From Octopus sinensis (taxonomy: Eukaryota): DNA of 64,000 nt. The position numbers were made by a program, and so were the translations under genes. Positions 485 to 60,655 of this stretch are shown here, piece after piece; within the stretch, counting starts at the first letter, position 1, and every line of letters starts with the position of its first letter. Below the pieces are notes generated by a model. It did no database searches. It had not been told where the DNA came from and saw only the letters and a list, made by a program, of their open reading frames with translations. The stretch lies in the NCBI RefSeq assembly GCF_006345805.1, contig NC_042998.1, forward strand, positions 61,194,001 to 61,258,000, written 5' to 3'.

Positions 485-690
485 TTACTTTTTGCCTGAT
501 GGTAGATATTTAAGTGCAGGCAAACAGTTAGCATTTTCAAGAGCTTCTCTGAGTATTTCAAATGTATTTGTGTTACTATTGCAGCGCGTAAGCCATGTTT
601 CTAGCATCTGAAAGCTCATTATTATATCGTTATTACCATTATCCTTGTCGATATTTGTTAGGGCATCAGTAGCAATGCCCAGAGAGATAC
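485..690 (-). CDS. Terminal coding exon of a death-domain protein (C-terminal two thirds of the DD)
   Basis: Acceptor tattttgcag|, phase 1; reads GISLGIATDALTNIDKDNGNNDIIMSFQMLETWLTRCNSNTNTFEILREALENANCLPALKYLPSGKK*; DD hallmarks LGI, MLETW, TFEILREAL; joins seamlessly to ...KWDLV of the upstream exon. Confidence 0.88.
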
Positions 691-1499
691 CTGCAAAATA
701 CACAAAAACAAGAACTAATTGCAACAACATTAGCAGTAATATAAATATAATAAAGAAACTTTATCAGTAGAGAAATAAGCATTGTTAAGAAACATGAACA
801 GTATAAGACATTGTTCTCAGTTTTTAAAGATGTTGATAAAAATAACAGAGGTTGAAAGAAAGGATGAAGGTGGAGAAGAAATGAAAGACAAATTGAAAAT
901 TACTTTTGGGAAAATTTTTGGTAAACAAATGGAAGGAAAAGTGTTTGTGTAGGCAAAAGTGTATCAGAGCCAAAAGAATCAACATAGATCATTAACAGTT
1001 ACACCATTTGCTCCTAACATTGAAGATCACCTGATAACATCACATTATCAATTCCTGAAAAGGGCATATGTAATGCCTCTCCTTCTCTGGCTATTTAATA
1101 TTTATAACATATCAACATGTAGACAGCAGGGATTAGACTACCAAACAATACTAGTAATATTGGCTGCAGCAAGACCAATGAAATACGAATATGATACCAG
1201 AATAATCTCAGCTACACAAAATGCAAAATATAATATTGTCTGATAGACATCGTATATTATAAAACACACTAGCTATAAACATGAACTAGGGTTCATGACT
1301 CATAGGAAATTTTGCTCTGGATCAAGGCCACAGTTTTATAGAGAAGTTGATAATGGAGAGGTCTGAAAGGAAACCAAGCAATGAAAAGAATTTTAGTTAA
1401 CAGGAAAGAAGACAGGAGTCACCAACATCTGGACCTTACATCTACAACAGTTAGGTCCTGAAGGAATCACTGCATCAATCAGTATCTTTATCATCTGGA

Positions 1500-2085
1500 G
1501 AGTTATCATATTTGACATGCAAGAAAGGTGGGTGGGGGTGGGGATAGGAATTCTATATGGCGTACCCATTATACATTAGAGGTATAGTTGGATCAGAGGT
1601 AGATTGACAGAGCGAAAGCACTTTGTATGTAACATTTTAGTTAGAGAAAAAAAAGTTAAGTGAAGAATGCACTGAAAGCTATTATGTTCACTGGCAACTA
1701 AGGGATTCCATGCCTAGATGAAGAGTAGATTGTATGATGTTTATTTGTAAAGTGTAATGCTGCATTGAATGCGGAGGATGTATAAAAACTGACAAGAAAT
1801 AAGGTAAGCATACTTCACTAGAAGTATGTTAGTATGAAGGAATGCTGGAACTAAGATGAGTTGGAAGAAAATGTGGATCTCAGAAGAATCAGAGATAGTG
1901 CACAAAAGAGATGATACAGATATAGAAGGAATATGGAAGATAAAGGTTCCAAGTGGAAAGAACCTATAGAAAACGATGGAGGAAGAGATGGAAAAGCATA
2001 GCAAAAGTTAATCACAACAGTTATGCTGGAGAAGTTGTCTAAGACTGACAAACATGGAAAAATGGACATTAAGATGATGATGATA
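1500..2085 (+). mobile_element. Highly degenerate RTE-clade LINE 3' fragment
   Basis: Remnant translation KGFHA*MKSRLYDVYL*SVMLH resembles the RTE ORF2 C-terminal region; ends in catggaaaaatggacattaagatgatgatgat, the same tail as the younger RTE copies. Confidence 0.55.
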
Positions 2086-2417
2086 ATTATGAACTGATGT
2101 TGGTGAATTGGTTTTACCCTAGTATATGACTGGTACATTCTGTATCAATTTCAAAAGCATAACAAGTCGACAATGTCATAGATAATGCCTTCACATACTT
2201 TCAATAAATCATTGATATAAGCTGATTGAGAGGATACTGTATTGATTCCCTGTGTCAAGGGTCAACAGTTCAAATCTAGCCCCAGCACTGCTCTCTGTCC
2301 CTGATAAACACAACTCTCTATAGTGCAGTCTACCTAGATGTAGATAGGTGCAATAGGGAGGTACAAGATATTGATGTAAATAATAGGAACATTGTATAAA
2401 TAATATTTTATGCTGTA

Positions 2418-3225: not shown

Positions 3226-3676
3226 AGAAACGATACATTTGATAACATGCTCCCACACACAAGTCAGGGGTTTCACACTTAGAAGACTTTTTATCATATG
3301 TCAGCCAGATGACAATAGACATCTGGTTAAATAACACTAACTTATCGACAAACTCAGAAAAAAAGGTAAAACAAACAAAAACATTACCATTAACCCACCT
3401 GCTTACACCAACACAACGGTGTATTTCAGTTCCCAATTCCAAAAGACAATATCAACTCTATTGTGTTGTTTCATTTATCAGTATTACCAACCATGCTAAC
3501 CTCTGTAGATATTTTATGAAATTTTAGTAATATCAGTACCTTTTATAGAATTACATTACAGTTAATCTTTCAATTGGAAATTAGGAATGGAACCAGTTCA
3601 CAGACGTTCTAGAAAACAAAAGTTCAACTGTACGTAACTCTTATAGAAACCAATTAAGTATTCTTATTTTATACAC

Positions 3677-3727
3677 GTGCTAAACTTTCAACCAACTTTA
3701 GATCCTGCTTGCTCAGGTTTAGATTCT
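3677..3727 (-). pseudogene. Degraded copy of DD exon 1 (51 nt)
   Basis: tatttcag| ENLNLSKQDLKLVESLA; has lost the 18 nt encoding KWDLV and the donor is reduced to GTGTAT. Confidence 0.7.
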
Positions 3728-4226
3728 CTGAAATATTTAAAGTTTTACACTTTATAGTTAAATTTCTATATCTCTATTGGAATTTATATTTTATTGTTGT
3801 GAGATATTCCTATCATTAATGGTCAACTGGTGACCACTGTGATTTCAGTCAACATTTTTATACTTTCTACAGTGGTACCATGTAATAACTTGATATCTAG
3901 GTCCACAACAGAGCAAACTAGACTTCCTAAATCTCCTCTCTATATTAAGACATCCTACTTAATCTAACAATGTTGCAATTATCTCATTTATTTACCACTT
4001 GCTAAGGATTTTTATCACTTAGTTTTGTCTTTCATTAATTATATTTCTGTCATATCTATGATATGCCGTTGTCCTCTGATGTCTAGACTTTACTAACCAA
4101 TATTCTTCTCATCATCAGCTTAATTCCAATGTCAACCAGGGCTTGACCATCTAAGATCTAGCCACAAACACATGACACACCACTTCAATTAGGATCATCA
4201 TATACCTGCTCTCTCTCTCTCTCTCA

Positions 4227-4260
<34 letters not shown>

Positions 4261-4790
4261 TTCTCTCTCTCTCTTTCTGTTAAAGGTTGCCACTGGTAAT
4301 CTTGAATTTTAACTACCCACATTACAGTTCACCAGAATGTCATCTGATTCTTGAAATATTTGAAAACATTTACTTGTCATTCATCCTCCTTAATAAAGCA
4401 GTTTCTTTTTAGGTGAGCAAAGATTAGTTCTACACAGGTGAAATGGACAGTGGTAATGTGTCCTCAAATACTGAGCATTTGCAATCAACGTCATAAACAA
4501 CATATAACCGATCATCCATATATTGCAACGAAAGTATCTGGAGTGATACAAAAGAACTGATTCTCAAGAATATAGGTTACCTATATTTAAATCTCATCTA
4601 TACATCAAACAAAGTTATATTCCCCTTTGATATCTCCTTTATCAACGTGGTTGGGATTTTAGTAATATTAGTACCCTTTATAGAATTACATTACAGTTAA
4701 TCTTTCAATTGGAAATTAGGAATGGAACAAGTTCACTGATTTTCTAGCAAACTTATAGAAAACAATCAAGTATTCTTATTTTATACTTAC

Positions 4791-4862
4791 CAACAAGATC
4801 CCACTTTTGTGCTAAACTTTCAACCAACTGTAGGAGATCCTCATTGGTGAGTCTTACAGCTT
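4791..4862 (-). CDS. DD exon 1, copy B (72 nt, phase 1-1)
   Basis: tatttcag|...|GTAAGT; EAVRLTNEDLLQLVESLAQKWDLV, DD helices 1-2 with conserved Trp. Confidence 0.85.
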
Positions 4863-5875
4863 CTGAAATATTTAAAGTTTTACACTTTATAGTTAAATTT
4901 CTATATCTCTATTGGAATTTATATTTTATTGTTGTGAGATATTCCTATCATTAATGGTCAACTGGTGACCACTGTGATTTCACTCAACATTTTTATACTT
5001 TCTACAGTGGTACCATGTAATAACTTGATATCTAGGTCCACAACAGAGCAAACTAGACTTCCTAAATCTCCTCTCTATATTAAGACATCCTACTTAATTT
5101 AACAAAGTTGCAATTATCTCATTTATTTACCACTTGCTAAGGATTTTTATCACTTAGTTTTGTCTTTCATTAATTATATTTCTGTCATATCTATGATATG
5201 CCGTTGTCCTCTGATGTCTAGACTTTACTAACCAATATTCTTCTCATCATCTGCTTAATTCCAATGTCAACCAGGGCTTGGCCATCTAAGATCTAGCCAC
5301 AAACACATGACACACCACTTCAATTAGGATCATCATATACCTACTCTCTCTCTCTCTCTCTCTGTTAAAGGTTGCCACTGGTAATCTTGAATTTTAACTA
5401 CCCACATTACAGTTCACCAGAATGTCATCTGATTCTTGAAATATTTGAAAACATTTACTTGTCATTCATCCTCCTTAATAAAGCAGTTTCTTTTCAGGTG
5501 AGCAAAGATTAGTTCTACACAGGTGAAATGGACAGTGGTAATGTGCCCTCAAATACTGAGCATTTGCAATCAATGTCATAAACAACGTATAACCGATCAT
5601 CCATATATTGCAACAAAAGTATCTGGAATGGTACAAAAGAACTGATTCTCAAGAATATAGGTTACCTCTATTTAAATCTCATCTATACATCAAACAAAAT
5701 TACATTCCTCTTTGATATCTCCTTCATCAACGTGGTTGGAATTTTAGTAATATTATTTCCCTTTATAGAATTACATTACAGTTAATCTTTCAATTGGAAA
5801 TTAGGAATGGAACAAGTTCACTGATATTCTAGCAAACTTATAGAAAACAATCAAGTATTCTTATTTTATACTTAC

Positions 5876-5947
5876 CAACATGATTCCACTTTTGTGCTAA
5901 ACTTTCAACCAACTGTTGGAGATTCTCCTTGGTGAGTCTTACATCCT
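5876..5947 (-). CDS. DD exon 1, copy C (72 nt, phase 1-1)
   Basis: tatttcag|...|GTAAGT; EDVRLTKENLQQLVESLAQKWNHV. Confidence 0.8.
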
Positions 5948-6427
5948 CTGAAATATTTAAAGTTTTAGACTTTATAGTTAGATTTCTATATCTCTATTAG
6001 AATTTATATTTTATTGTTGTGAGATATTCCTATCATTAATGGTCAACTGGTGACCACTGTGATTTCAGTCAACATTTTTATACTTTCTACAGTGGTACCA
6101 TGTAATAACTTGATATCTAGGTCCACAACAGAGCAAACTAGACTTCCTAAATCTCCTCTCTATATTAAGACATCCTACTTAATCTAACAAAGTTGCAATT
6201 ATCTCTTTTATTTACCACTTGCTAACGATTTTTATCACTTAGATTTGTCTTTCATTAGTTATATTTCTGTCATATCTATGATATGCCGTTGTCCTCTGAC
6301 ATCTAGACTTTACTAACCAATATTCTTCTCATCATCTGCTTAATTCCAATGTCAACCAGGGCTTGGCCATCTAAGATTTAGCCACAAACACATGACACAC
6401 CACTTCAATTAGGATCATCATACAACT

Positions 6428-6475
<48 letters not shown>

Positions 6476-7717
6476 ACTCTCTCTCTCTCTGTTAAAGGTT
6501 GCCACTGGTAATCTTGAATTTTAACTACCCACATTACAGTTCACCAGAATGTCATCTGATTCTTGAAATATTTGAAAACATTTGCTTGTCATTCATCCTC
6601 CTTAGAAAAACAGTTTCTTTTAAAATGAGCAATGATTAGTTCTACACAAGTGAAATGGACAGTGGTAATATGCCCTAAAATACTATGCATTTGCACTCAA
6701 CATCATAAGCTACATATAACATATCATCCATATATTGCAACAAAAGTACCTGGAATGGTACAACAGAACGGATTCTCAAGAATATAGGTTACCTCTATTT
6801 AAATCTCATCTATACATCAAACAAAGTTACCTTCCCCTTTGATATCTCTTTATCAATGTGGTTGGCATTGATAGGGTAGTAACCAAGAAACCAGAAAATT
6901 TGAGGACTCGGAACTTACACCTGTGTAGCAGGGTCTGATTGACAGAAACTGTCTGGTGATGTTATTGTTAATATAAGAACAACATGAAAAAGAATATCTA
7001 ATCCCATTCATGTTACCAACGTTATACTACATTTATCACTGATGTTAATTAAGACCAACTAATTACAAAATGTCACAGTAATGCTTTATAAAATATACCT
7101 AAATAGTATCATAAATATACAGAAATGTTTCACATATTGTTTTAGGAGACAATAACATCTGGACCTTATTGGACTATAGAAGTCAATAATGCCAGTTTTT
7201 AGAGAAGTGGTTCTGTGCCCAAGAAAAACTGTAGAATAACTTACACAGATGGTAATAAGATATAAATCTGTTGGGTGAGCGTAAAAGATGATGCTACGAT
7301 AAAATCAGGTTAAATTTCAGACATACAAATGTAATTCAGTTAATGAATAATATCTGATTCATTACCATGTTAACAGGTTGTATATATAATACAAAAAAAC
7401 ACTGTCTGACATGCAATACAAGATATCTATATAAATTGTACATAATCTGACTAGAAAATAAGTGACTTTCATTACAGTGAATATGATTATGTCTCAGCAC
7501 AGATCTATATAGTAGAAATTTCATCATCATCATCATCATCATCATCACCATCATCATATTTGTCGTCGTTTTCATTTAATATCTGCTTTCCATGCTGAGG
7601 TCTGAATGTGAGGTCTTGCAAGCCTGAAGGCTCCTATCTGATCTGATATACATGCATACATATATATGCATATATATATATATATGTGTATGTACATATA
7701 TATATATATATGTATAT

Positions 7718-9248: not shown

Positions 9249-9338
9249 CATTATCAACATCATCAATTTCATCATCTCCACCATCATCATCTTCTTCATT
9301 ATCATCATCAGATTTGACTGAGGGCTGGTATTGATGTT
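9249..9338 (-). CDS. Acidic cassette exon, 90 nt, phase 1-1
   Basis: ttacttactag|...|GTGAGT; EHQYQPSVKSDDDNEEDDDGGDDEIDDVDN. Confidence 0.72.
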
Positions 9339-46633: not shown

Positions 46634-46668
<35 letters not shown>

Positions 46669-49600
46669 GAGAGAACGAGAGAGGGAGAGAGAGGGAGAGC
46701 GACTACCATACTTATTCTAGCCTGAGACATTCTGGGAAGATACTCCTGTAAGTGATGATATCTCATCATCATCAACATCATCATCATCATCATCACCATC
46801 ATAATCATCACCACCACCACCATCACCATCATCACCATCATCACACACCACCATACACCACCACCACCACACAACTACGACGACGACGACGACCATCATC
46901 ATCATCATTATCATCATTGTGCTTAATATCCGCATTCGATGCTGAGGTCTCACTGAAGGCTGGCAAGCCTAAAGGCTGCACCAGGCTCCAATTTGATCTG
47001 ATATGTATGCATATATATGTAAACATATATATATTTGTATACATATATATGCATATATATGCATATACATACATAGATATATCACAGTGAAAGTATTAAC
47101 TCACATTACAATAGTGATTTTATTGTTTCACTTTTCACAAATAATTGTACCTTAGCTTCAACCAGTCTGTCTTGGCATTCTCTACCTCTCTCTGAAGTCA
47201 TTATTCTTATCCTCATTTTCTTGTAACTTTCAGTCCCTGCATCCTCATTATTCTTCCGTCATCACTTAAACGTCTCACTTTCTCAACATGTCTTCATGAT
47301 TGTAAAATCACATCAGAGAGCAACGAGATATGTATAATATTATGAGATGCAAGACAACCTAACCAGTGCAAGCACTATGAGAAAATGGCCCCAGTACACA
47401 CTTGAAAGTGATTTGTGAATGAGAGGAGACAGCTTAATTTTGAGTGGAACCTACAATGGAATTGTGGACATTGGAGTCTGGTACTGCCACTCAGCTTGCC
47501 AGCTCTGGTCAAACTCTCCAACTCATGCCAGCTTGGACACTGGATGTTATATGGTGATGATGATGTTAATCTTATTATTGCCTGTGTTACAATAGAACAG
47601 AAACAAAATCCTTTATATAATGTTTGCTGTTAAGAAGAGTATCTTGTCATGTAAAATCCAGAGTATTTAAGTGAGATGTGTGTGTACCTGAAGCATTCAA
47701 AGTTGATGTTAACTCTGAATGAGAACAGATTTGGACATTGATGACCCATCTAATGGTTGGGAGCATGGATGCAGATGATGAATGATAATGACACTATCAT
47801 TTATTATTTTGTATTTATTATTTTGCATCTTGCAGCCTGTATCTAATCTTTATGACTTGGAACTTACACCTGTGTAGAAGGGTCTGACTGACAGAAACTG
47901 TCGTGTAATGTTTTTGTTAATAATGAGAGCAACATCACAAGTAAAATCTAATACCATTGATGTTACCAACTTTATACTACATTTGTCACTGATATTAATT
48001 AAAACAAACTAATTACAAAAGGTCACAGTAATGCTTTATAAAATATACCTAAATAGTATCATAACTATACAGAAATGTTTCACATATTGTTTCAGGACAC
48101 AATAACATCTGGACATTATTGGACTATTGAAGTCAATAATCCCAGTTTGTAGAGAAGTGGTTCTGTGCACAAGACAAACAGTAGAATTACTTACACAGAT
48201 GGTAATAAGGTTTAAATCTGTTGGGTGAGGGTAGAAGATGATGCCATGATAAAATCAGGTTAAATTTCAGACATACAAATGTAAATCAGTTAATGAATAA
48301 TATCTGATTCATTATCATGTTAACAGGTTGTATATGTAATACAAAAAAACACTGTCTGACATTGCAATACTAGATATCTATATAAATTGTATATAATCTG
48401 ACAAAAAAATAAGTGACTTTCATTAGAGTGAATATGATTATTTCTCAGCACAGATCTATATTGTAGACGTTCCATCAAAATCATCATCATCATCATTGTC
48501 ATCGTCGTTTAATATCTGCTTTCTATGCTTAGGTCTGACTGATTTCTGGCAAGCGAGAAGCCTGAACCAGGCTCCAATCTGATATGATATGTATGCATAT
48601 ACATGTAAACATACATATACATGCATACATATATATGCATATATATACAGACATATGCATACATAAATATATCACAGTGAAACTATTAACTCACATTACA
48701 ATAGTGATTTTATTGTTTCACTTTTGACAAGTAATACTGAAATAGTGTTAGAGATAAGAGATTGCTCCAGGAACACATTAGGCAAGAAGTTGAAAATTTG
48801 TTTGGCCCATGACACTGCATGGACCTTAAGTAAGGCCTGTGTAAAAATTGAATGAAATCATGTGGGTAGTTCTCTAGTTTTAGTGATACACACATACAAA
48901 CAGACAGACAGACACACATTTACACTCACACTTACATGCATTCTTAGGCGCAGGAGTGGCTGTGTGGTAAGTAGCTTATCTACCAAACACATGGTTGTGG
49001 GTTCAGTCCCACTGCGTGGCACCTTGGGCAAGTGTCTTCTACTATAGCCTTGGGCCGACCAAAACCTTGTGAGTGGATTTGGTAGACGGAAACTGAAAGA
49101 AGACCATCGTATATATGTATATATATGTATGCGAGTGTGTATTTGTGTGTCTGTGTTTGTCCCCTAGCATTGCTTGACAACCGATGCTGGTGTGTTTATG
49201 TCCCCGTTACTTAGCGGTTCGGCAAAAGAGACCGATAGAATAAGTACTGGGCTTACAAAAGAATAAGTCTCGGGGTCGAGTTGCTCGACTAAAGGCGGTG
49301 CTCCAGCATGGCCGCAGTCAAATGACTGAAACAGGTAGAAGAATAAAAGAATAAAAAGAAAGAATAAAAAGAATATATATATATAGACTATAATACATAT
49401 TCTAACCTGAAACATTCTGGGAAGATACTCCGGTGAGAGATGATATCTCATATCAAACATCAGAGTATGTAAATCTCTGACATCTTCATATGATTAAAAA
49501 TCAAGAAGAACTTCTGGAGAACAATTTTGTAAACAAAGGAAATTATCTTTAACAATTTTTACCACTTAAAAACCTTTCCAGTTGAGATTTGTTATTGAAT

Positions 49601-49953
49601 CTCCTACATTACAAAGCTGAGAATGATGTTCTTATAAGTACTTTTGACTTTAATTGTCAGTTTCCCAAGATGTTAATAACATCATTAATCATCTCTGTTG
49701 GTTCACAAATGACAGTCACTCAGTCTTCTCATTCTCCACCTCTCTTTCAAATCACCATTCTTATCCTCGTTTCACTCCCTGCATCTTCATTATTTTTCTG
49801 TCATCACTTCTCAACGTGTCACCTTGAATGAAAGAACACATCATAAGAGCAGTAAGAACTGTCTAATTTTCTGGCTGCAAGAAAAACTGACCAATGCTAG
49901 TCCCCAAGAGAAAACTTATAGAAATAGATTTGGTACTTCAGTTTTATACTCAC

Positions 49954-49989
49954 CATCTTGCATTTCATATCCATCCTCCATGTGTGAGT
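49954..49989 (-). CDS. Cassette micro-exon, 36 nt, phase 1-1
   Basis: Identical to 41955-41990, same splice sites. Confidence 0.6.
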
Positions 49990-52496
49990 CTGAAATTCAT
50001 AATTTCAAGTGTTATAATTATAGTAAAATTTACCAGCATTCACATTCACACAAAAAGCTATAATTATTAATCTAAACTTTTACCAATAACGAATATTCAC
50101 AGCAACACTGACCAAATGATTGGACAGTTATAGTTTCTAATGTTTGTTGAGATTTTGTGATTGAGCCTCATACTTTACCAAAGCCAACATTGATGTTCTA
50201 GTAAGTAACACTGTCTTTGACTATTGGATTTTCAAGATGATTTTCAAGATGTAAATCATTAACCATCTCACAAATAATTGTATCTTAGCTTCATCCATTC
50301 GGTCATGTCATTCTCCATCTCTCTTTCAAGTCATTGTTCTTATCCTCATTTTCTTGTAACATTCAGTCTCTACATCCTCATTATTCTTCCGTTATCACTT
50401 AAACTTATCACTTTCTCAACATGTCTTCATGTTTGTAAAAACACATCAAAGAGCAATGAGAATTGTATAATATTATGAGATGCAAACAACCTGACCAGTG
50501 CTAGCACTATGAGGAAATGGCCCCAGTACACACTTGAAAGTGATTGGTAAATGAGAGGAGACAGCATAATTTTCTGTGGAACGTTCAATCTAATTGTGGA
50601 CATTGGAGTCTGGTGCTGCCCCTCTGCTTGCCAGCTGTGGTCAAACTGTCCAACGCAGGCCAGCATGGACAATGGACGTAAAATGTTGATGATGATGACA
50701 ATCTATTAGTGCCTGTGTTACAATAAACATACCCAAGAGACTTTATAAAAGGTTGCTGTTAAGATGATAAGTTGTCAAAGAAAATCCAGAGTATTTACGA
50801 GAGATGTGTGGCTACCTCAAGCAAAGTCAAAGTGGATGTAACCTCTGAATAGAACTGGCTGGACATTGATGACCCATCTAATCGACGGGAGCATGGAAGC
50901 AGATGATGAATGATAATACATATCATTTTTTTTTTTGTATTTATTATTTTGCCTCGTGCAGCCTGTATCTAATCTTTATGACTTGGAACTTACACCTGTG
51001 TAGCAGGGTCTGACTGACAGAAACTGTGTGTAATGTTTTGTTAATAATGAGAGCACATCACAATTAAAATCTAATCCCATTGATGTTACCAACTTTATAC
51101 TACATTTGCCACTGATATTATTAAACCAACTAATTACAAAAGGTCACAGTAGTATGCTTATAAAATATACCTAAATAGTATCATAACTATACAGAAATGT
51201 TTCACAATTGTTTCAGGAAACAATAAAATCTGGACATTATTGGACTATTGAAGTCAATAATGAATAATATCCGATTCTTATCATGTTAACAGGTTGTATA
51301 TGTAATACAAAAAAAAAAACACTGTCTTACCTTGCCAATACTAGATATTTATATAAATTGTATATAATCTGACTAAAAAAATAAGTGACTTTCATTACAG
51401 TGAATATGATTATTTCTCAGCACAGATCTATATTCTCCACTCTCATTGTTCTTATCCTCATTTTCTTATAATTTCAGTCCCGCATCCTCATCATTCTTCC
51501 GTTATCACATAAACTTCTCACTTTCTCAACAGGTCATCATGATTGTAAAAACACATGAAAGAGCAATGAGAATTGTATAATATTATGAGATGCAAGACAA
51601 CCTGACTAGTGCTAGCGCTATGAGAAAATGGCCCCAGTACACACATGAACTTACACTGTGTAGCAGGGTCTGACAGACAGAAACTGTCTTCGATGTTATT
51701 GTTAATATAAGAACAACATCAAAAGGATATCTAATTCCATTCATGTCACCAAAGTTACACTACAAAATTTTCACTGATGTTAATTAAGACCAACTAATTA
51801 CAAATGGTCAAGAAATGATTTATATAATATATCTAAGTACTATGATAAATACAGAAATGTTTCACATGTTGTTTCAGGAGACAATAACATCTAGACCTCA
51901 TTGGACTATAGAAGTTAATAATCCCAGTTTGTAGAGAAGTGGTTGTGTGCCCACGAAAAACAGTAGAATTACTTACACAGAAGGTAATAAGGGTTTAAAT
52001 CTGTTGCGTGAGAGTACAAGATGATGCTATGAGAAAATAGGGTTCAATTTCAGACACAAAATGTAAATCAGTAATAAATAATATCTGATTCATTATCATG
52101 TTAAAAGGTTTCATATGTAATACAAAAAAACACTCTCTGTCATTGCAATAAAAGATATCTATACAAATTGTATATAATCTGACTAGAAAATAAGTGACTT
52201 TCATTACAGAGAATATGATTATGTCCCAGCATAGATCTCTTTTGCAGAATTTCCTTCTCCTCCTCATCCTTTCACACCACAACCGCCATCACCACCACCG
52301 CCGCCGCCGCCACCACCACCACCGCCAGCACCACCACCAGGACAAGCACCACCACCACCACCACAACCTCAACCACAACCACCAACACCACCATCATCAT
52401 CATCATCATGATCATCATCATGATGAGGATGATGATGAAGATGATCATCATGATCATCATCATCATCTTCATCATCATCATCATCATCATCATCAA

Positions 52497-52528
<32 letters not shown>

Positions 52529-53062
52529 GCATCACCACCATCATTACCATCACCACAACAACGACGACGACGACCACCACCACCACACCACAACCACCAC
52601 CATCATCATCATCATCATTATCATCAACATCATTGTTGCTTAATATCCGCATTCGATGCTGAGGTCTCACTGAAGGCTCGCAATCCTAAAGGCTGCAACA
52701 GGCTCCAATTTGATCTGATATGTACGCATATATATGTAAACATATATATATTTGTATACATATATATGCATATATACATATACATACATAGATATATCAC
52801 AGTGAAAGTATTAACTCACATTACAATAGTGATTTTATTGTTTCACTTTTGACAAGTAATACTGAAATAGTGTTAGATATAAGAGATTGCTCCAGGATCA
52901 CATTAGGCAAGAAGTTGAACATTTGTTTGGCCCATGATACTGCATGGACATTAAGTAAGGCATGTGTGAAATTTGAATGAAATCATTTGGATAGTTCTAG
53001 AATTTTAGTGATGCAGAGAGACAAACATTTACACGCACAGATACATGCATTCTCAGTTACAT

Positions 53063-53095
<33 letters not shown>

Positions 53096-53691
53096 GGAGA
53101 GAGAGAGAGAGAGACTATCATACTCATTCTAGCCTGAGACATTCTGGGAAGATACTCCTGTAAGTGATGATATCTCATATCACACATCAGACTACCGTAA
53201 ATATCTGACATCTTCATAAGATGATAAATCAAGAAGACCTGTGGAGGACGATTTTGTAAACAAATGAAATTATCTTTAAACAATTTTTTCTAGTTAAAAT
53301 CATTTTCAGTTTAGATTTGTTATTGAATCTCCTACATTAGAAGCTGAAAATGATGTTTTATAAGTACTTTTGACTTTAATTGTCAGTTTCCAAAGATGTT
53401 AATACATCATTAATCATTTCTGTTGGTTCACAACTAACAGTCACTCAGTCTTGTCATTCTCCACCTCTCTTTCAAATCACCATTCTTATCCTCATTTTCT
53501 CACAACTTTTACTCCCTGCATCCTCAGTATTCTTCTGTCATCACTTCTCAACATGTCACCTTGAATGAATAAACACATCATAAGAGCAGTAAGAACTGTC
53601 TAATTTCCTGGGATGCAAGAAAAAACTGACAATGCTAGTCCTCAAGGGAAAACTGATCGAAATCAATTTGGTACTTCAGTTTTATACTCAC

Positions 53692-53748
53692 CATGTGGAT
53701 GTGATGTACTTTGACATGTTGTACTTGGCTGTCCAAATCTATATATGT
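53692..53748 (-). CDS. Cassette exon, 57 nt, phase 1-1
   Basis: DIYRFGQPSTTCQSTSHPH; one change (G>C) relative to 45859-45915. Confidence 0.62.
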
Positions 53749-53974
53749 CTGAAATTCATAATTTAAGAGTTTTAATTTATAGTAAAATTTTCCAGCATTC
53801 ACATTCACAAAAAAAGCTACAATTATTAATCTAAATTTTTACTTTTCATGAACATTCACAGCAACACTGACCAAATGATATCGCAGTTAGACTTTCAAAT
53901 ATTTGTTGAGATTTTCTTATTGAGCCTCATACTTTACCAAAACCAACATTGATGTTCTATTAAGTAACCCTGTC

Positions 53975-54010
<36 letters not shown>

Positions 54011-57000
54011 CGTCATCATTATCATCGTCATCCTCATCATCATCATTGTTTTTTAATATCCAATTTCGATGCTAAGGTCTCACTGAATGCTGGCAAATCT
54101 AAAGGCTGCACCAGGCTCCAATCTGATCTGATATGCATGCATATATATGTAAACATATCTGTATTTGTATAAATATATATGCATATATATACATATACAC
54201 ACATAGATATATCACGATGAAAGTATTAACTCACATTACAATAGTGATTTTATTGTTTCATTTTGACAAGTAATACTGAAATAGTGTAAGAGATAAGAGA
54301 TTGATCCATGATCACATTTACAAGAAGTTGAAATTTGTTTGGCTCATGATACTGTATGGACCTGAAGTAAGGCATGTGTGGAAATTTGAATGAAATCATT
54401 TGGATAGTTCTAGAATTTTAGTGATGCAGACAGACAAACATTTACACGCACAGATACACTCATTCTCAGTTACATAAATATATATATATATATATCGAGA
54501 GAGAACGAGAGAGGGAGAGAGAGGGAGAGCGACTATCATACTTATTCTAGCCTGAGACATTCTGGGAAGATACTCCTGTAAGTGATGATATCTCATCATC
54601 ATCAACATCATCATCATCATCATCATCATCATAATCATCACCACCACCACCATCACCATCATCACCATCATCACCACCACCACCACCATCACCACCACCA
54701 CCACCACCACCACCACCACCACCACCACCACCACCACCAACACAACTACGACGACGACGACGACCATCATCATCATCATTATCATCATTGTTGCTTAATA
54801 TCCGCATTCGATGCTGAGGTCTCACTGAAGGCTGGCAAGCCTAAAGGCTGCACCAGGCTCCAATTTGATCTGATATGTATGCATATATATGTAAACATAT
54901 ATATATTTGTATACATATATATGCATATATATGCATATACATACATAGATATATCACAGTGAAAGTATTAACTCACATTACAATAGTGATTTTATTGTTT
55001 CACTTTTCACAATAATTGTACCTTAGCTTCAACCAGTCTGTCTTGGCATTCTCTACCTCTCTCTGAAGTCATATTCTTATCCTCATTTCTTGTAACTTTC
55101 AGTCCCTGCATCCTCATTATTCTTCCGTCATCACTTAAACGTCTCACTTTCTCAACATGTCTTCATGATTGTAAAATCACATCAGAGAGCAACGAGATAT
55201 GTATAATATTATGAGATGCAAGACAACCTAACCAGTGCAAGCACTATGAGAAAATGGCCCCAGTACACACTTGAAAGTGATTTGTGAATGAGAGGAGACA
55301 GCTTAATTTTGAGTGGAACCTACAATGGAATTGTGGACATTGGAGTCTGGTACTGCCATCAGCTTGCCAGCTCTGGTCAAACTCTCCAACTCATGCCAGC
55401 TTGGACACTGGATGTTATATGGTGATGATGATGTTAATCTTATTATTGCCTGTGTTACAATAGAACAGAAACAAAATCCTTATATAATGTTTGCTGTTAA
55501 GAAGAGTATCTTGTCATGTAAAATCCAGAGTATTTAAGTGAGATGTGTGTGTACCTGAAGCATTCAAAGTTGATGTTAACTCTGAATGAGAACAGATTTG
55601 GACATTGATGACCCATCTAATGGTTGGGAGCATGGATGCAGATGATGAATGATAATGACACTATCATTTATTATTTTGTATTTATTATTTTGCCTCTTGC
55701 AGCCTGTATCTAATCTTTATGACTTGGAACTTACACCTGTGTAGAAGGGTCTGACTGACAGAAACTGTCGTGTAATGTTTTTGTTAATAATGAGAGCAAC
55801 ATCACAAGTAAAATCTAATACCATTGATGTTACCAACTTTTATACTACATTTGTCACTGATATTAATTAAAAAAAACTAATTACAAAAGGTCACAGTAAT
55901 GCTTTATAAAATATACCTAAATAGTATCATAACTATACAGAAATGTTTCACATATGTTTCAGGACACAATAACATCTGGACATTATTGGACTATTGAAGT
56001 CAATAATCCCAGTTGTAGAGAAGTGGTTCTGTGCACAAGACAAACAGTAGAATTACTTACACAGAGGGTAATAAGGTTTAAATCTGTGGGTGAGGGTACA
56101 AGATGATGCTGTTATACAATCAGGTTAAATTTCAGACATACAAATGTAAATCAATTAATGAATAAATCCGATTCATTATCATGTTAACAGGGTATATGTA
56201 ATACAAAAAAAAAAAACTGTCTTACATTGCAATACTAGATATTTATATAAATTGTATATAATCTGACTAAAAAATAAGTGACTTTCATTACAGTGAATAT
56301 GATTATTTCTCAGCACAGATCTATATTCTCCACCTCTCATTGTTCTTATCCTCATTTTCTTATAATTTCAGTCCCTGCATCCTCATCATTCTTCCGTTAT
56401 CACATAAAAAAATAAGTGACTTTCATTAGAGTGAATATGATTATTTCTCAGCACAGATCTATATTGTAGACGTTCCATCAAAATCATCATCATCATCATT
56501 GTCATCGTCGTTTAATATCTGCTTTCTATGCTTAGGTCTGACTGATTTCTGGCAAGCGAGAAGCCTGAACCAGGCTCCAATCTGATATGATATGTATGCA
56601 TATACATGTAAACATACATATACATGCATATATATATATGCATATATATACAGACATATGCATACATAAATATATCACAGTGAAACTATTAACTCACATT
56701 ACAATAGTGATTTATTGTTTCACTTTTGACAAGTAATACTGAAATAGTTTAGAGATAAGAGAGATTGCTCCAGGAACACATTAGGCAAGAAGTTGAAAAT
56801 TTGTTTGGCCCATGACACTGCATGGACCTTAAGTAAGGCCTGTGTAAAAATTGAATGAAATCATGTGGGTAGTTCTCTAGTTTTAGTGATACACACATAC
56901 AAACAGACAGACAGACACACATTTACACTCACACTTACGTGCATTCTTAGGCGCAGGAGTGGCTGTGTGGTAAGTAGCTTATCTACCAAACACATGGTTG

Positions 57001-57954
57001 TGGGTTCAGTCCCACTGCGTGGCACCTTGGGCAAGTGTCTTCTACTATAGCCTTGGGCCGACCAAAACCTTGTGAGTGGATTTGGTAGACGGAAACTGAA
57101 AGAAGACCATCGTATATATGTATATATATGTATGCGAGTGTGTATTTGTGTGTCTGTGTTTGTCCCCTAGCATTGCTTGACAACCGATGCTGGTGTGTTT
57201 ATGTCCCCGTTACTTAGCGGTTCGGCAAAAGAGACCGATAGAATAAGTACTGGGCTTACAAAAGAATAAGTCTCGGGGTCGAGTTGCTCGACTAAAGGCG
57301 GTGCTCCAGCATGGCCGCAGTCAAATGACTGAACAGGTAGAAGAATAAAAGAATAAAAAGAAAGAATAAAAAGAATATATATATATAGACTATAATACAT
57401 ATTCTAACCTGAAACATTCTGGGAAGATACTCCGGTGAGAGATGATATCTCATATCAAACATCAGAGTATGTAAATCTCTGACATCTTCATATGATTAAA
57501 AATCAAGAAGAACTTCTGGAGAACAATTTTGTAAACAAAGGAAATTATCTTTAACAATTTTTACCACTTAAAAACCTTTCCAGTTGAGATTTGTTATTGA
57601 ATCTCCTACATTACAAAGCTGAGAATGATGTTCTTATAAGTACTTTTGACTTTAATTGTCAGTTTCCCAAGATGTTAATAACATCATTAATCATCTCTGT
57701 TGGTTCACAAATGACAGTCACTCAGTCTTCTCATTCTCCACCTCTCTTTCAAATCACCATTCTTATCCTCGTTTCACTCCCTGCATCTTCATTATTTTTC
57801 TGTCATCACTTCTCAACGTGTCACCTTGAATGAAAGAACACATCATAAGAGCAGTAAGAACTGTCTAATTTTCTGGCTGCAAGAAAACTGACCAATGCTA
57901 GTCCCCAAGAGAAAACTTATAGAAATAGATTTGGTACTTCAGTTTTATACTCAC

Positions 57955-57990
57955 CATCTTGCATTTCATATCCATCCTCCATGTGTGAGT
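57955..57990 (-). CDS. Cassette micro-exon, 36 nt, phase 1-1
   Basis: Identical to 41955-41990, same splice sites. Confidence 0.6.
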
Positions 57991-60589
57991 CTGAAATTCA
58001 TAATTTCAAGTGTTATAATTATAGTAAAATTTACCAGCATTCACATTCACACAAAAAGCTATAATTATTAATCTAAACTTTTACCAATAACGAATATTCA
58101 CAGCAACACTGACCAAATGATTGGACAGTTATAGTTTCTAATGTTTGTTGAGATTTTGTGATTGAGCCTCATACTTTACCAAAGCCAACATTGATGTTCT
58201 AGTAAGTAACACTGTCTTTGATTATTGGATTTTCAAGATGTTAGTAAATCATTAACCATCTCACAAATAATTGTATCTTAGCTTCATCCATTCGGTCATG
58301 TCATTCTCCATCTCTCTTTCAAGTCATTGTTCTTATCCTCATTTTCTTGTAACATTCAGTCTCTACATCCTCATTATTCTTCCGTTATCACTTAAACTTA
58401 TCACTTTCTCAACATGTCTTCATGATTGTAAAAACACATCAAAGAGCAATGAGAATTGTATAATATTATGAGATGCAAACAACCTGACCAGTGCTAGCAT
58501 TATGAGGAAATGGCCCCAGTACACACATGAACTTACACCTGTGTAGCAGGGTCTGACAGACAGAAACTGTCTTCGATGTTATTTTTAATATAAGAACAAC
58601 ATCAAAAGGAATATCTAATTCCATTCATGTCACCAAAGTTACACTACAAATTTTCACTGATGTTAATTAAGACCAACTAATTACAAATGGTCACAGAAAT
58701 GATTTATATAATATATCTAAATAGTATCATAAATATACAGAAATGTTTCACATGTTGTTTCAGGAGACAATAACATCTAGACCTCATTGGACTATAGAAG
58801 TTAATAATCCCAGTTTGTAGAGAAGTGGTTGTGTGCCCACGGAAAACAGTAGAATTACTTACACAGAAGGTAATAAGGTTTAAATCTGTTGGGTGAGAGT
58901 ACAAGATGATGCTATGAGAAAATAGGGTTCAATTTCAGACATACAAATGTAAATCAGTTAATAAATAATATCTGATTCATTACCATGTTAACAGGTTTCA
59001 TATGTAATACAAAAAAACACTGTCTGTCATTGCAATAAAAGATATCTATACAAATTGTATATAATCTGACTAGAAAAGAAGTGACTTTCATTACGGAGAA
59101 TATGATTATGTCCCAGCACAGATCTCTATTGCAGAATATCCTCCTCCTCCTCCTCCTCCTCCTCATCCTTTAACACACAACCATATGTAATATATGTATA
59201 TAGGCTAATAGCAGTATTGCCCGGCTCGTGTGCTCTTGTGTTCTATGCACGCGTGAATTAAGCTAAACTTGGATGAAGTTCAATCAAAATTCAATTATTT
59301 TGGTTTTAAAATCAAGCATTTTATACCCTTATGTGTTCTATTTCCTCAATAGGAAGTACGTAGAAGCGTTTTATAAATTTTTGTTGATCAAATAATTGCA
59401 TTGTTGAATTATTCTTTTATATCAGTATTCTCACGGGGATTTCAAGGTAGAGATCCAGGAGCTGCTGGCGATGTATCGTGATAATCAAAATCCAGCCTGC
59501 TAAAATTTGGTTAAGGGATTCAAACTGCAGACTCAATGCAAAATGGTTACATTTAATTCAAAGCATAAAAATGTTATGTAAACAATTGGTATGTGTTCAC
59601 ATAGTCCAAATGATTTATACGAAAATACCTACCAGGCTATATCCCGAAAAGCCATTTCTTTGTTGAATTCCTCTAATGTTTATGGCGATTCGTTTTTATA
59701 TCTTGATTTTGGATTTTTCATGTAATTTACGCATGCTTGTACGCGTGGTGAACACAGATTACGTCAAAAAGCTGACTGATTAACTTTCACTATTCAACGT
59801 AGGGGATAAGGCGTAAACAAACGCATTATCGATTTTTGCAATTGCGAGATGAATTTGGAACAAAAATAGCGCAGTTCAATTTTCATTTGCCTAAACTTTA
59901 AGTGACCCATTTTTGGTGGTTCTACGATCTGTTGGCTAGGAGGAGATGTGCCAGGAAGTTAAACCCACAGACAAACACACAGACAAACAAGTTGAGTTTC
60001 ATATATATATAGATAATACATATTCTAATCTGAGACATTCTGGGAAGATACTCCGGCAAGAGATCATATCTCATATCAAACATCAGACTACCTTAAAAAT
60101 GTGACATCTTCATACGATGATAAATCAACAAGAACTTCTGGATAACGATTCTGGAACCAAATGAAATTGTCTCTAATAAATTTTACCAGTTGAAAACGTT
60201 TTTATTTGCAATTTGTTATTGAATCTCCTACATTAGAAAGCTGAAAATGTGGTTCTTATAAGTAATTTTGACTTTAATTATCAGATTCACAAGATGTTAA
60301 TACATCATTAATCATCACTGTTGGTTCACAACTGATGGTCATTCTGTCTTATCATTCTCCACCTCTCCTTCAAATCACCATTTGTATCCTCATTTTCTCA
60401 CAACTTTCACTCCCTGCATCCTCAGTATTCTTCTGTCAACACTTCTCAACGTGTCCCCTTGAATGATAAAACACATCATAAGAGCAGTAAGAACTGTCAA
60501 ATTTTATGGGATGCAAGAAAAACTGACCAATGCTAGTGCTCAAAGGAAAACTTATATAAATGAATTTGGTACTTCAGTTTTATACTCAC

Positions 60590-60655
60590 CATTTGACGGT
60601 GATGTTCTTTGACGGGTTGTGCCCGGCTGTTCTTTTCTAGGCGGCAATTCTATGA
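60590..60655 (-). CDS. Cassette exon, 66 nt, phase 1-1
   Basis: gaatttcag|...|GTGAGT; VIELPPRKEQPGTTRQRTSPSN. Confidence 0.72.

What the first reader, a model, noticed from the sequence alone, without database searches (positions are those of the whole stretch)
485..60655. Death-domain gene fed by a ~55 kb tandem array of frame-symmetric cassette exons (candidate combinatorial diversification system)
Seen: twelve minus-strand segments (60590, 57955, 53692, 49954, 45859, 41955, 36718, 33571, 30450, 27329, 24744, 9249) share the same GTGAG donor context, have AG acceptors, and have lengths of 36, 57, 66, 90 or 129 nt. Phase 1 is the only phase open in all of them, and it is the phase of the DD exons at 5876/4791 and 690. 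Any subset can be spliced into one uninterrupted frame ending in a complete DD (LTNEDLLQLVESLAQKWDLV-GISLGI...MLETW...TFEILREAL). Established: DD-fold proteins (FADD, MyD88, TNFR and IRAK types) are immune and apoptosis signalling modules, and tandem exon arrays drive isoform diversity in Dscam. Inference: this is an expandable library of short basic, acidic and Ser/Thr/Pro-rich linker modules upstream of a DD, used constitutively or combinatorially. I know of no description of such a locus in cephalopods but cannot search. The N-terminal part of the gene lies outside the window.
Basis: partly seen in the sequence, partly recalled or inferred. Interest (0 to 1): 0.92.

Follow-up and report, generated by a model that had tools for sequence, protein, structure and literature searches.

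The report
Amplified linker exons before octopus death domain
The twelve short exons are real and belong to an already annotated Octopus sinensis gene, but they look like a recently amplified, fast-evolving flexible linker in front of a death domain, derived from the tail of a cell-surface receptor, not like a Dscam-style recognition library.

Summary
All 12 minus-strand segments have the stated coordinates, lengths, AG/GT boundaries and phase 1-1 symmetry. The window is identical to Octopus sinensis chromosome CM016860.1 and holds RefSeq gene LOC115232413 ('uncharacterized protein', at least isoforms X1-X10). All nine isoform proteins retrieved (X4 was not) parse exactly as ordered subsets of these exons plus two death-domain (DD) first-exon copies and a last exon. 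The C-terminus is a divergent DD.

New here:
- The array is a lineage-specific tandem amplification. In O. bimaculoides the collinear region, 84-93% identical in non-coding DNA, has one linker exon, one DD exon 1 and one DD exon 2. There it forms the cytoplasmic tail of an LRR adhesion GPCR (LOC106882527).
- The same layout, phase 1-1 mini-exons before a split DD, occurs in the two octopus RING-DD ('MIB2-like') paralogue loci examined.
- Coding exons diverge 3-4 times faster than adjacent introns (DD exon 2: 24.8% against 7.6%, dN/dS about 4.8). This points to positive selection.

The Dscam analogy fails. The exons are co-included rather than mutually exclusive, fall into only about five sequence classes, and encode low-complexity, probably disordered, probably cytoplasmic linker. 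Whether the array is still spliced to the receptor body is unresolved.

The parts
60590..60655 (-). Cassette exon A1, 66 nt, phase 1-1, VIELPPRKEQPGTTRQRTSPSN
   Evidence: present in isoforms X1-X3, X5-X8 and X10
57955..57990 (-). Cassette exon B1, 36 nt, DSHMEDGYEMQD (acidic; identical to B2 and B3)
53692..53748 (-). Cassette exon C1, 57 nt, DIYRFGQPSTTCQSTSHPH
49954..49989 (-). Cassette exon B2, 36 nt
45859..45915 (-). Cassette exon C2, 57 nt (1 nt different from C1: Cys to Gly)
41955..41990 (-). Cassette exon B3, 36 nt; skipped in isoform X2
36718..36783 (-). Cassette exon A2, 66 nt, GRELPPRTERPATTRQRTSPSN; skipped in X8
33571..33636 (-). Cassette exon A3, 66 nt, VIELSLRNKKPVPTRRRTSPSN; skipped in X5 and X8
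30450..30515 (-). Cassette exon A4, 66 nt, VIELSPRNKKPVTTRQRTSPSN; skipped in X3, X7 and X10
27329..27394 (-). Cassette exon A5, 66 nt, DTELQTRNVQPGTTQQRKSPSN. It has a second acceptor 6 nt downstream (exon then starts at 27388, peptide ELQTRN...).
   Evidence: both forms occur in the RefSeq proteins
24744..24872 (-). Acidic cassette exon D, 129 nt; present in most isoforms, never together with exon E
9249..9338 (-). Acidic cassette exon E, 90 nt (EHQYQPSVKSDDDNEEDDDGGDDEIDDVDN); used only in isoform X7
5876..5947 (-). DD exon 1, copy a, 72 nt, EDVRLTKENLQQLVESLAQKWNHV
   Evidence: included in all retrieved models
4791..4862 (-). DD exon 1, copy b, 72 nt, EAVRLTNEDLLQLVESLAQKWDLV
3677..3727 (-). 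Third, degenerate copy of DD exon 1. An internal deletion removes the end of the exon and the donor. Not in any model.
485..690 (-). DD exon 2 with the stop codon (the remaining helices of the DD); AATAAA/ATTAAA signals lie at 396, 325 and 312
26739..38093 (-). Tandem repeat of a unit of about 3.12 kb (about 3.6 copies, 93-96% identical), each carrying one class A exon
38884..58531 (-). Tandem repeat of a unit of about 8 kb (about 2.5 copies, 97-99% identical), each carrying one class B and one class C exon
3517..6869 (-). Tandem triplication of a unit of about 1.1 kb carrying DD exon 1 (90-96% identical)
20540..20584 (-). Start of a truncated unit copy: the intron that normally follows the donor is present, but there is no exon or donor

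Best explanation
The window holds most of O. sinensis gene LOC115232413. Its product is a long, low-complexity linker, probably disordered (inferred from composition), built from short exons and ending in a divergent death domain (DD).

Shown:
- The exons are real, are all phase 1-1, and are spliced in several ordered subsets in the RefSeq models.
- The array arose in the O. sinensis lineage by repeated unequal tandem duplication of one exon-plus-intron unit. In O. bimaculoides the collinear region has a single linker exon, one DD exon 1 and one DD exon 2. There it is the cytoplasmic tail of an adhesion GPCR with leucine-rich repeats (LOC106882527).
- The O. bimaculoides exon lengthened by a different route: an internal 15-nt repeat encoding (QSTSQ)n.
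- Coding exons, both the cassette exons and the DD, have diverged 3-4 times faster than the introns next to them, mainly at non-synonymous sites.

Inferred:
- The linker acts as a tether whose length and charge can vary. It connects a membrane-proximal part, most likely the receptor's seven-helix body, to a DD that nucleates DD-DD signalling assemblies. Partners could include the octopus-specific RING-DD ('MIB2-like') and DD-only paralogues.
- Exon duplication over evolutionary time, and exon skipping in the cell, change the tether rather than create recognition diversity.
- Positive selection suggests a conflict-driven role, such as immunity or self/non-self recognition.
For: Exons, frame and isoforms:
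- Coordinates, lengths and phases were verified.
- The window is identical to the O. sinensis chromosome.
- The gene and its isoforms are in RefSeq. All nine retrieved proteins parse as ordered exon subsets.

DD identity:
- Pfam Death E=8.6e-4 and 4e-3 for the window sequences.
- A profile of the family hits RIPK1, PIDD, ankyrin, CRADD, Fas, TRADD and FADD DDs, down to E=1.8e-13.
- 11 of 12 family members hit Pfam Death.
- The AlphaFold model (pLDDT 81) matches solved DDs at TM 0.68-0.79.

Amplification:
- Self-comparison shows tandem units of 3.12 kb, about 8 kb and 1.1 kb.
- More copies, some frameshifted, lie upstream of the annotated start.

Orthology to the receptor tail:
- In O. bimaculoides (locus L004) the last 7TM exon is followed by one 267-nt linker exon with the same 'attatgaatttcag' and 'gtgagtataaaa' junctions, then DD exon 1 and DD exon 2.
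- L004 95.5-103.6 kb is collinear with the window at 84-93% identity, including the flank beyond the stop codon.

Family-wide layout:
- Phase 1-1 mini-exons of 51, 66 or 72 nt lie between the RING exon and the DD in two paralogue loci.

Fast exon evolution:
- Class A exon: 23 substitutions in 66 nt against 126 in 1588 nt of intron, P=2e-9, with pN well above pS in most pairs.
- DD exon 2 between species: 51/206 against 84/1111 in the intron, P=2e-11, dN/dS 4.8. Whole DD: pN 0.308, pS 0.122, P=0.006.
- DD exon 1: 21-23/72 against 22-27/437.
Against: - RefSeq treats this as a stand-alone gene, and no 7TM exon lies within 10 kb upstream.
- The O. sinensis receptor body (LOC115224769, same chromosome) is modelled with a tail of its own. 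That tail has 11 copies of DPHMRDGNEAPV and a truncated DD exon 2, and none of it is in the fetched locus. Its chromosomal position could not be retrieved. A physical or splicing link between receptor and window is therefore unproven.
- The isoforms are Gnomon models. I could not see the RNA evidence. Junctions between near-identical units can be mis-assigned from short reads.
- The 97-99% identical 8-kb units could be partly an assembly artefact.
- The annotated start codon (MRD) sits in a class B exon copy with a 1-nt deletion. This may be a real decay event or a sequencing error.
- The selection tests are simple counts on short sequences. The exons are richer in G+C and CpG than the introns, which could raise their mutation rate somewhat.
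- The w27329 copy shows high pS as well as high pN.
- The role of the linker and the DD partners are inferred, not shown.
Confidence: 0.62

Rival explanations
1. The gene is a stand-alone adaptor, as RefSeq annotates it. A duplicated copy of the receptor tail became an independent cytosolic protein (linker plus DD) with its own promoter. It would act like FADD or MyD88 without a second domain, or as a decoy or regulator of the receptor's DD signalling.
For: - RefSeq models begin inside the array and contain no receptor exons.
- The receptor gene has its own tail in the annotation.
- DD-only proteins of 130-190 aa exist in this octopus family.
Against: - The annotated start codon is created by a 1-nt deletion in an exon copy.
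- An intact in-frame exon copy lies further upstream, so no real first exon or promoter is evident.
- The orthologous region in O. bimaculoides is part of the receptor gene.
Confidence: 0.3
2. One reading: a Dscam-like combinatorial system in which many alternative exons generate a large repertoire of functionally distinct isoforms for recognition.
For: - The array is a tandem set of frame-symmetric exons.
- The nine retrieved isoform models differ in which exons are used.
- The exons evolve fast.
Against: - Exons are co-included: X1 uses 11 of the 12, so they are not mutually exclusive.
- There are only about five sequence classes, and three exons are identical.
- Exon lengths differ.
- The peptides are low-complexity linker with no family match.
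- By homology with O. bimaculoides they lie on the cytoplasmic side of a receptor.
Confidence: 0.05
3. The array is a decaying by-product of unstable tandem repeats or of assembly error. The duplicated units would have no function, and the isoforms would reflect splicing noise or read mis-mapping among near-identical copies.
For: - Some copies are frameshifted, lack the exon or are truncated.
- The 8-kb units are 97-99% identical.
- The receptor model in this assembly lacks the exon or exons encoding about 70 residues of the first transmembrane region.
Against: - All twelve in-window copies keep both splice sites and an open phase-1 frame.
- Exon divergence exceeds intron divergence mainly at non-synonymous sites. 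Neutral decay cannot produce that.
- Class A copies differ by up to 27% in the exon, so they are not collapsed haplotypes.
Confidence: 0.08

Closest known systems
O. bimaculoides LOC106882527 (XP_052821851 / XP_014788728, 'G-protein coupled receptor 126-like'), an LRR adhesion GPCR with a C-terminal death domain
   Same: - Its 3' end is collinear with the window at 84-93% identity in non-coding DNA.
- The splice-junction sequences are the same, and the DD is split into the same two exons.
- Its DD is the closest found outside this gene, at 49% identity.
- Ritschard et al. [quoted passage not shown]
   Different: - It has one 267-nt linker exon, lengthened by an internal 15-nt repeat. The window locus has at least 17 exon units.
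- It has one DD exon 1 instead of three copies.
- Its DD protein sequence is only 49% identical.
- In O. bimaculoides the tail is clearly joined to the receptor body. In O. sinensis that is unproven.
Octopus 'MIB2-like' RING-DD proteins, some with ankyrin repeats (for example O. sinensis XP_036355658 and LOC115232124)
   Same: - Same DD subfamily (37-45% identity).
- Same layout of phase 1-1 mini-exons (51, 66 or 72 nt) in tandem before a two-exon DD.
- A similar sequence of about 45 nt follows each donor.
   Different: - Their N-terminal part carries a MIB-type RING finger, in some members preceded by ankyrin repeats.
- Their arrays are small (3-6 exons) and compact. One has a period of 166 bp, against 3-8 kb here.
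Titin PEVK and I-band exon arrays, and nebulin super-repeat exon blocks (from my own knowledge)
   Same: - Tandemly duplicated, frame-symmetric short exons encode a disordered or modular spacer.
- There are recent block duplications, and differential exon skipping sets the spacer length.
   Different: - Those are extensible springs or rulers in muscle proteins and are conserved across vertebrates.
- Here the array precedes a signalling domain, is species-lineage specific, and evolves under apparent positive selection.
CD44 variable exons v1-v10 and CD45 exons A, B and C (from my own knowledge)
   Same: A contiguous block of in-frame cassette exons is included in different combinations to vary a low-complexity stalk next to the functional part of a receptor.
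   Different: - Those stalks are extracellular and glycosylated, and the exons are not recent duplicates of each other.
- Here the linker is probably cytoplasmic and the exons are paralogous copies.
Dscam1 clusters of mutually exclusive exons (from my own knowledge)
   Same: A tandem array of duplicated exons inside one gene, with many possible in-frame products.
   Different: - Dscam includes exactly one exon per cluster. Its exons have equal length and encode halves of Ig domains that set binding specificity.
- Here the exons are included together, differ in length, and encode linker.
Death-domain receptors and adaptors (TNFR1, Fas, p75NTR, UNC5, ankyrin, RIPK1, PIDD)
   Same: - A C-terminal DD, with the DD fold supported by profile and model comparison.
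- The DD is joined to the rest of the protein by a flexible region.
   Different: - I know of no described vertebrate DD fused to an adhesion GPCR.
- The window's own sequence is below Pfam's curated cut-off.
- No functional data exist.

Membership tests
Death domain (Pfam PF00531, death-fold superfamily) | Significant match to the DD sequence profile | tested here: inconclusive
   The window's own DD scores 17.7 and 19.8 bits, below the 22.6-bit cut-off, at E=4e-3 and 8.6e-4. At family level the match is clear: 11 of 12 aligned relatives hit PF00531 (best E=1.9e-11). The family profile hits the RIPK1 DD at E=1.8e-13 and many other solved DDs.
Death domain (Pfam PF00531, death-fold superfamily) | Compact six-helix bundle fold | tested here: met
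   The AlphaFold2 model has pLDDT 81.1 and pTM 0.69. DSSP calls five helices, the first one long. Foldseek's top matches are all DDs (TNFR1, ankyrin-G/1, RAIDD, PIDD, RIPK1), with TM 0.68-0.79 and probability 1.00. This is a prediction, not a solved structure.
Death domain (Pfam PF00531, death-fold superfamily) | Homotypic DD-DD assembly | not testable with these tools
   Needs binding or assembly experiments.
Dscam-type cluster of mutually exclusive exons | Exactly one exon of the cluster is included per mRNA | tested here: not met
   RefSeq isoform X1 contains 11 of the 12 exons, and the other retrieved isoforms contain 8-10. Only exons 24872-24744 and 9338-9249 never occur together, and X10 has neither.
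Dscam-type cluster of mutually exclusive exons | Alternative exons have equal length and encode the same structural element | tested here: not met
   Lengths are 36, 57, 66, 90 and 129 nt. The peptides are basic, acidic or Ser/Thr/Pro/Gln-rich linker with no family match.
Dscam-type cluster of mutually exclusive exons | Competing docking-site and selector RNA pairings | not tested
   Not searched for, because the exons are co-included.
Cassette-exon array derived from tandem exon duplication (titin PEVK type) | Exons and flanking introns are paralogous copies in tandem | tested here: met
   Units are 84-99% identical over 0.6-8 kb. All share acceptor and donor contexts.
Cassette-exon array derived from tandem exon duplication (titin PEVK type) | Frame-symmetric exons, so that any can be skipped | tested here: met
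   All lengths are multiples of 3 and all exons are phase 1-1.
Cassette-exon array derived from tandem exon duplication (titin PEVK type) | Differential inclusion in transcripts | tested here: inconclusive
   The nine retrieved RefSeq isoform proteins differ by exon skipping. They are Gnomon predictions, and I could not inspect the RNA evidence. Near-identical units make short-read junctions ambiguous.
Adhesion GPCR (GAIN/GPS domain plus 7TM of the secretin/adhesion class) | GPS motif and 7TM_2 domain in the same gene product | tested here: not met
   No receptor exon was found in the window or within 10 kb upstream of the annotated coding start. The orthologous O. bimaculoides tail is joined to LRR, GPS and 7TM exons. 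The O. sinensis receptor body is a separate model on the same chromosome, at an unknown distance. So the window derives from such a gene, but current membership is unproven.
Octopus-specific DD subfamily (aGPCR-DD, RING-DD with or without ankyrin repeats, and DD-only proteins) | DD at least about 37% identical to the subfamily, with the conserved W/VG/FQML/W/CxxAL pattern, and split at the same VG|I position into two exons | tested here: met
   Identity to eleven members is 37-49%, with 13 invariant columns. The exon 1/exon 2 boundary is the same in the window gene (L001) and in L002, L003 and L004. All relatives at or above 37% whose source was looked up are from O. bimaculoides, O. sinensis or O. 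vulgaris.

The most novel reading that the evidence does not exclude
Octopuses have a fast-evolving receptor system with a leucine-rich-repeat ectodomain on an adhesion GPCR and a cytoplasmic death domain. That would be a Toll-like design built from different parts. Its tail is remodelled under positive selection in each lineage by exon amplification (O. sinensis) or intra-exon repeat expansion (O. bimaculoides), and further by exon skipping. It would signal through a co-expanded set of RING-DD ligases. This would be a new kind of innate immune or self-recognition pathway with arms-race dynamics acting on the signalling domain itself.
Probability: 0.2. Interest if true: 0.75.

Novelty: new variant of a known kind. 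Interest (0 to 1): 0.5.

Why it matters
The gene is already in RefSeq, so the exon array itself is not a discovery. Arrays of duplicated, skippable exons that encode linkers are also a known kind of thing.

Three points appear to be undescribed:
- One linker exon expanded to at least 17 units since two Octopus species split, while the sister species lengthened the same linker by a different route.
- A death domain and its linker evolve several times faster than the neighbouring introns.
- A death domain sits on an LRR adhesion GPCR, and an octopus-specific family shares the same exon layout.

If the selection signal holds up, this locus is a compact model for two questions: how signalling tails are rebuilt by exon duplication, and whether death-fold domains in invertebrates are targets of host-pathogen conflict.

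Tried and rejected
- Pfam search of the concatenated linker found no family.
- Protein search with the spliced product found only this gene's own isoforms. No O. vulgaris or O. bimaculoides orthologue of the linker was found.
- I tried to locate the O. sinensis receptor gene LOC115224769 relative to the window. Its range is 209 kb, so neither DNA nor coordinates were returned.
- Its tail exons are not in the fetched locus. A search with its tail found nothing.
- A search for receptor exons in the 88.7-kb locus found only the DD exon.
- Look-up of isoform P0018 failed, because only the longest product is on record. P0070 was used instead.
- The wide alignment of class A units is unreliable beyond column 1770, where copies leave the array. 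It gave a non-significant test, so I restricted the comparison to the well-aligned 1.6 kb.
- I considered the conserved sequence after the donors as a selectively maintained splicing element. Introns of the paralogues align generally at 65-75%, so the motif at about 80% is only mildly more conserved. I treat it as a sign of common origin, not as shown function.
- Incidental ORFs in the window gave no credible family match. The long His/Asp/Met/Val ORFs are trinucleotide repeats.
- Literature searches found no description of this locus. The only related mention is one line in PMC6408891.

Full report
**1. The observation**

- On the minus strand, twelve segments lie at the stated places with the stated lengths: 66 nt (five), 36 nt (three), 57 nt (two), 129 nt and 90 nt.
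- Each follows an AG acceptor. Ten have ...ATGAATTTCAG and two have ...TTACTAG. Each precedes G|GTGAG(T/A)ATAAAACTGAAGTACCAA.
- Reading with one base carried over, all twelve are open. The other two frames each contain a stop in several copies.
- The two 72-nt exons at 5947-5876 and 4862-4791 and the last exon at 690-485 are in the same phase. Together they encode about 92 residues that end in a stop codon.

**2. What the gene is**

- A protein search with the spliced product returned only Octopus sinensis LOC115232413, 'uncharacterized protein'. Nine isoform proteins of 300-363 aa were retrieved, labelled X1-X3 and X5-X10. X4 was not retrieved.
- The window is 100% identical to CM016860.1, positions 61.18-61.27 Mb.
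  - X1 uses eleven of the twelve.
  - Others skip 41955 (X2), 30450 (X3), 33571 (X5), a B-C pair (X6), or 36718 plus 33571 (X8).
  - X7 uses 9249 in place of 24744.
  - X10 uses neither acidic exon.
  - Exon 27394-27329 has a second acceptor 6 nt downstream.
  - Both copies of DD exon 1 are included in every retrieved model.
- The exons are therefore real in the sense of the public annotation. These are Gnomon models and I could not inspect the RNA evidence. Some junctions between near-identical copies could be mis-assigned from short reads.

**3. The C-terminal domain**

- On its own the window sequence is below Pfam's cut-off for Death (17.7 and 19.8 bits against 22.6). Its best solved relatives are the ankyrin-3, RIPK1 and TNFR1 DDs.
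- An exhaustive search found 58 relatives.
- An alignment of twelve of them hits the RIPK1 DD at E=1.8e-13, and also PIDD, ankyrin, CRADD, Fas, TRADD and FADD. Eleven of the twelve hit Pfam Death.
- An AlphaFold model (pLDDT 81) matches solved DDs at TM 0.68-0.79.
- I conclude that it is a divergent DD.

**4. Anatomy of the array**

- Self-comparison shows that the 'twelve exons' sit in segmental tandem repeats:
  - a 3.12-kb unit, about 3.6 copies (26739-38093, 93-96% identical);
  - a unit of about 8 kb carrying one B and one C exon, about 2.5 copies (38884-58531, 97-99%);
  - a 1.1-kb unit carrying DD exon 1, three copies (3517-6869). The third copy has lost its exon end and donor (3727-3677).
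- Exon-less unit remnants occur near 20584 and 62620.
- The array continues beyond the window. The fetched locus (L001) shows:
  - a further C exon;
  - a B copy with a 1-nt deletion, whose ATG supplies the annotated start 'MRD';
  - a frameshifted A copy;
  - an intact A copy still further upstream.
- The true 5' end is therefore unknown, and the annotated start looks accidental.

**5. Where it came from**

- The closest DD outside this gene (49% identity) belongs to O. bimaculoides LOC106882527. This is a 1535-aa protein with leucine-rich repeats, a GPS motif, a 7TM domain of the adhesion class and a C-terminal DD.
- In its locus (L004) the last 7TM exon is followed by:
  - one 267-nt phase 1-1 linker exon, with the same 'attatgaatttcag' acceptor and 'gtgagtataaaa' donor contexts as the window's cassettes;
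  - one DD exon 1;
  - one DD exon 2.
- L004 95.5-103.6 kb is collinear with the window at 84-93% identity.
  - The DD exon 2 region matches window 1819-168.
  - The DD exon 1 region matches window 7533-5737.
  - The flanks of the linker exon match every cassette unit.
  - A stretch beyond the stop codon also matches.
- The window is therefore the O. sinensis counterpart of the receptor's tail. One unit was amplified to at least 17, and DD exon 1 was triplicated.
- The O. bimaculoides exon lengthened differently, through about 15 copies of a 15-nt repeat (CAAAGTACATCAC..). That repeat's core is also present once in the window's class A and class C exons.
- The O. sinensis counterpart of the receptor body is LOC115224769 on the same chromosome. 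By eye it is roughly 85% identical to the O. bimaculoides protein outside the LRR region and the gapped first-transmembrane stretch.
  - Its model carries a tail of its own: 11 copies of DPHMRDGNEAPV (compare class B, DSHMEDGYEMQD), two 19-aa exons (compare class C), and a truncated DD exon 2. Over its first 31 residues, that exon is about 70% identical to the window's.
  - Those exons are not in the fetched locus. No 7TM exon is there either. The gene's position could not be retrieved.
- The simplest reading is that the whole tail was duplicated in the O. sinensis lineage and the window is the copy with the intact DD. Adjacency and splicing to the receptor are not shown.

**6. A family trait**

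- All relatives at or above 37% identity whose source was looked up come from O. bimaculoides, O. sinensis or O. vulgaris. Many are RING proteins, some also with ankyrin repeats, named 'MIB2-like'.
- In two such loci the region between the RING exon and the DD is also a tandem set of phase 1-1 mini-exons.
  - One has five 51-nt exons with a 166-bp period.
  - The other has three 51-nt exons (the last two identical) and one 66-nt exon.
  - Both have the same junction sequences and a similar stretch of about 45 nt after each donor.
- The window is the extreme case of a shared design.

**7. Rates of evolution**

- Among five class A copies, the 66-nt exon carries 23 substitutions against 126 in 1588 nt of flanking intron (Fisher P=2e-9). 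It is the single outlier in a sliding window. In most pairs pN is 0.13-0.22 while pS is about 0.03, close to the intron value.
- Between the two species:
  - DD exon 2 differs at 51 of 206 positions, against 84 of 1111 in the upstream intron (P=2e-11), with no gaps. dS is 0.078 and dN is 0.377.
  - DD exon 1 differs at 21-23 of 72 positions, against 22-27 of 437.
  - For the whole DD, pN is 0.308 and pS is 0.122 (P=0.006).
- Neutral decay cannot make exons diverge faster than introns mainly at non-synonymous sites. Gene conversion from a distant paralogue would raise pS as well.
- I therefore infer positive selection, with three cautions:
  - the sequences are short and the tests are simple counts;
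  - the exons are richer in G+C and CpG than the introns;
  - one copy (27394-27329) shows high pS as well as high pN.

**8. How it most likely works**

- The linker modules are basic (class A, net charge +1 to +5), acidic (class B -5, exon D -10, exon E -14) or Ser/Thr/Pro/Gln-rich. They have no family match.
- I infer a flexible tether between a membrane-proximal part and a DD that nucleates DD-DD assemblies. Duplication and skipping would tune its length, charge and possibly its phosphorylation sites.
- This resembles the titin PEVK exon arrays and the CD44/CD45 variable-exon blocks (from my own knowledge). It does not resemble Dscam, whose defining feature, one exon per cluster, was tested here and not met.

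**9. Novelty**

- The gene and its isoforms are public.
- One paper mentions in a single line that one O. bimaculoides adhesion GPCR has a Death domain (PMC6408891).
- I found no description of the exon amplification, of the shared exon layout, or of the fast evolution of the exons.
- I rate it a new variant of a known kind, of moderate interest. Its value depends on confirming the selection signal and the link to the receptor.

Noticed in passing
L001 9975-10010 (equivalent to window coordinate about 69.1 kb, outside the window): The annotated start codon of LOC115232413 ('MRD') lies in a class B exon copy that has lost one A. The deletion shifts the frame and exposes an ATG. This may be real decay or a homopolymer error in the assembly. 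If it is an error, the open frame would extend further upstream.
   Followed up: partly
L001 2900-2965 and about 6030-6095: Upstream of the annotated gene there is one intact class A exon copy (GRELPPRNERPATTRQRTSPSN, donor GTGAGTATTAAA). There is also one copy with an indel and a damaged donor. Neither is in any RefSeq model.
   Followed up: partly
window 3677-3727: There is a third copy of DD exon 1 with an internal deletion that removes its last 22 nt or so and the donor. The two intact copies are both included in every retrieved model, so the protein would carry the segment encoded by DD exon 1 twice in tandem.
   Followed up: partly
window 44554-44713, 52392-52552, 54639-54743, 63851-63969 (and a likely similar stretch near 38.0-38.3 kb, seen only in the ORF list): Long CAT/CAC trinucleotide repeats occur inside the repeat units. 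They produce the long poly-His, poly-Asp, poly-Met/Val and poly-Ile ORFs seen on both strands. They are not genes.
   Followed up: yes
window 13700-15250: This is a G+C-rich block (46% against about 35% elsewhere) with 40-, 62- and 82-bp minisatellite repeats and overlapping repetitive ORFs on both strands. It lies in the 15-kb intron between exons 24744 and 9338. Its nature is unknown.
   Followed up: no
window 60659-61466: A 401-bp tandem duplication (94% identical) lies immediately upstream of the acceptor of exon 60655-60590. It duplicates the acceptor-proximal intron.
   Followed up: no
L002 17458-22630, L003 13264-23030, L004 97603 and 101151, and all window donors: About 45 nt after the donor, GT(G/A)AGTATAAAA...TAC..AATTGATTTCTATAAGTTT, is shared by linker mini-exons and DD exon 1 in paralogous genes on different contigs. 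This suggests that all these exons descend from one exon-intron boundary. It is only mildly more conserved (about 80%) than the surrounding introns (65-75%).
   Followed up: partly
L004 97337-97603 (O. bimaculoides): The single linker exon of the O. bimaculoides orthologue contains about 15 tandem copies of a 15-nt unit encoding QSTS(Q/P/S). The same linker thus grew by a different mechanism in the sister lineage.
   Followed up: yes
protein P0076 (O. sinensis LOC115224769): The receptor model lacks about 70 residues covering the first transmembrane helices that are present in the O. bimaculoides protein. It ends in a DD exon 2 copy cut short by an early stop, and its gene spans 209 kb. This suggests an incomplete model or assembly problems in this region.
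   Followed up: partly
paralogue loci L002 and L003 against L001: Introns of paralogous family members still align at 65-75% identity, while their DD proteins are only 37-45% identical. Fast protein evolution may therefore be a property of the whole octopus DD family, not only of this gene.
   Followed up: no
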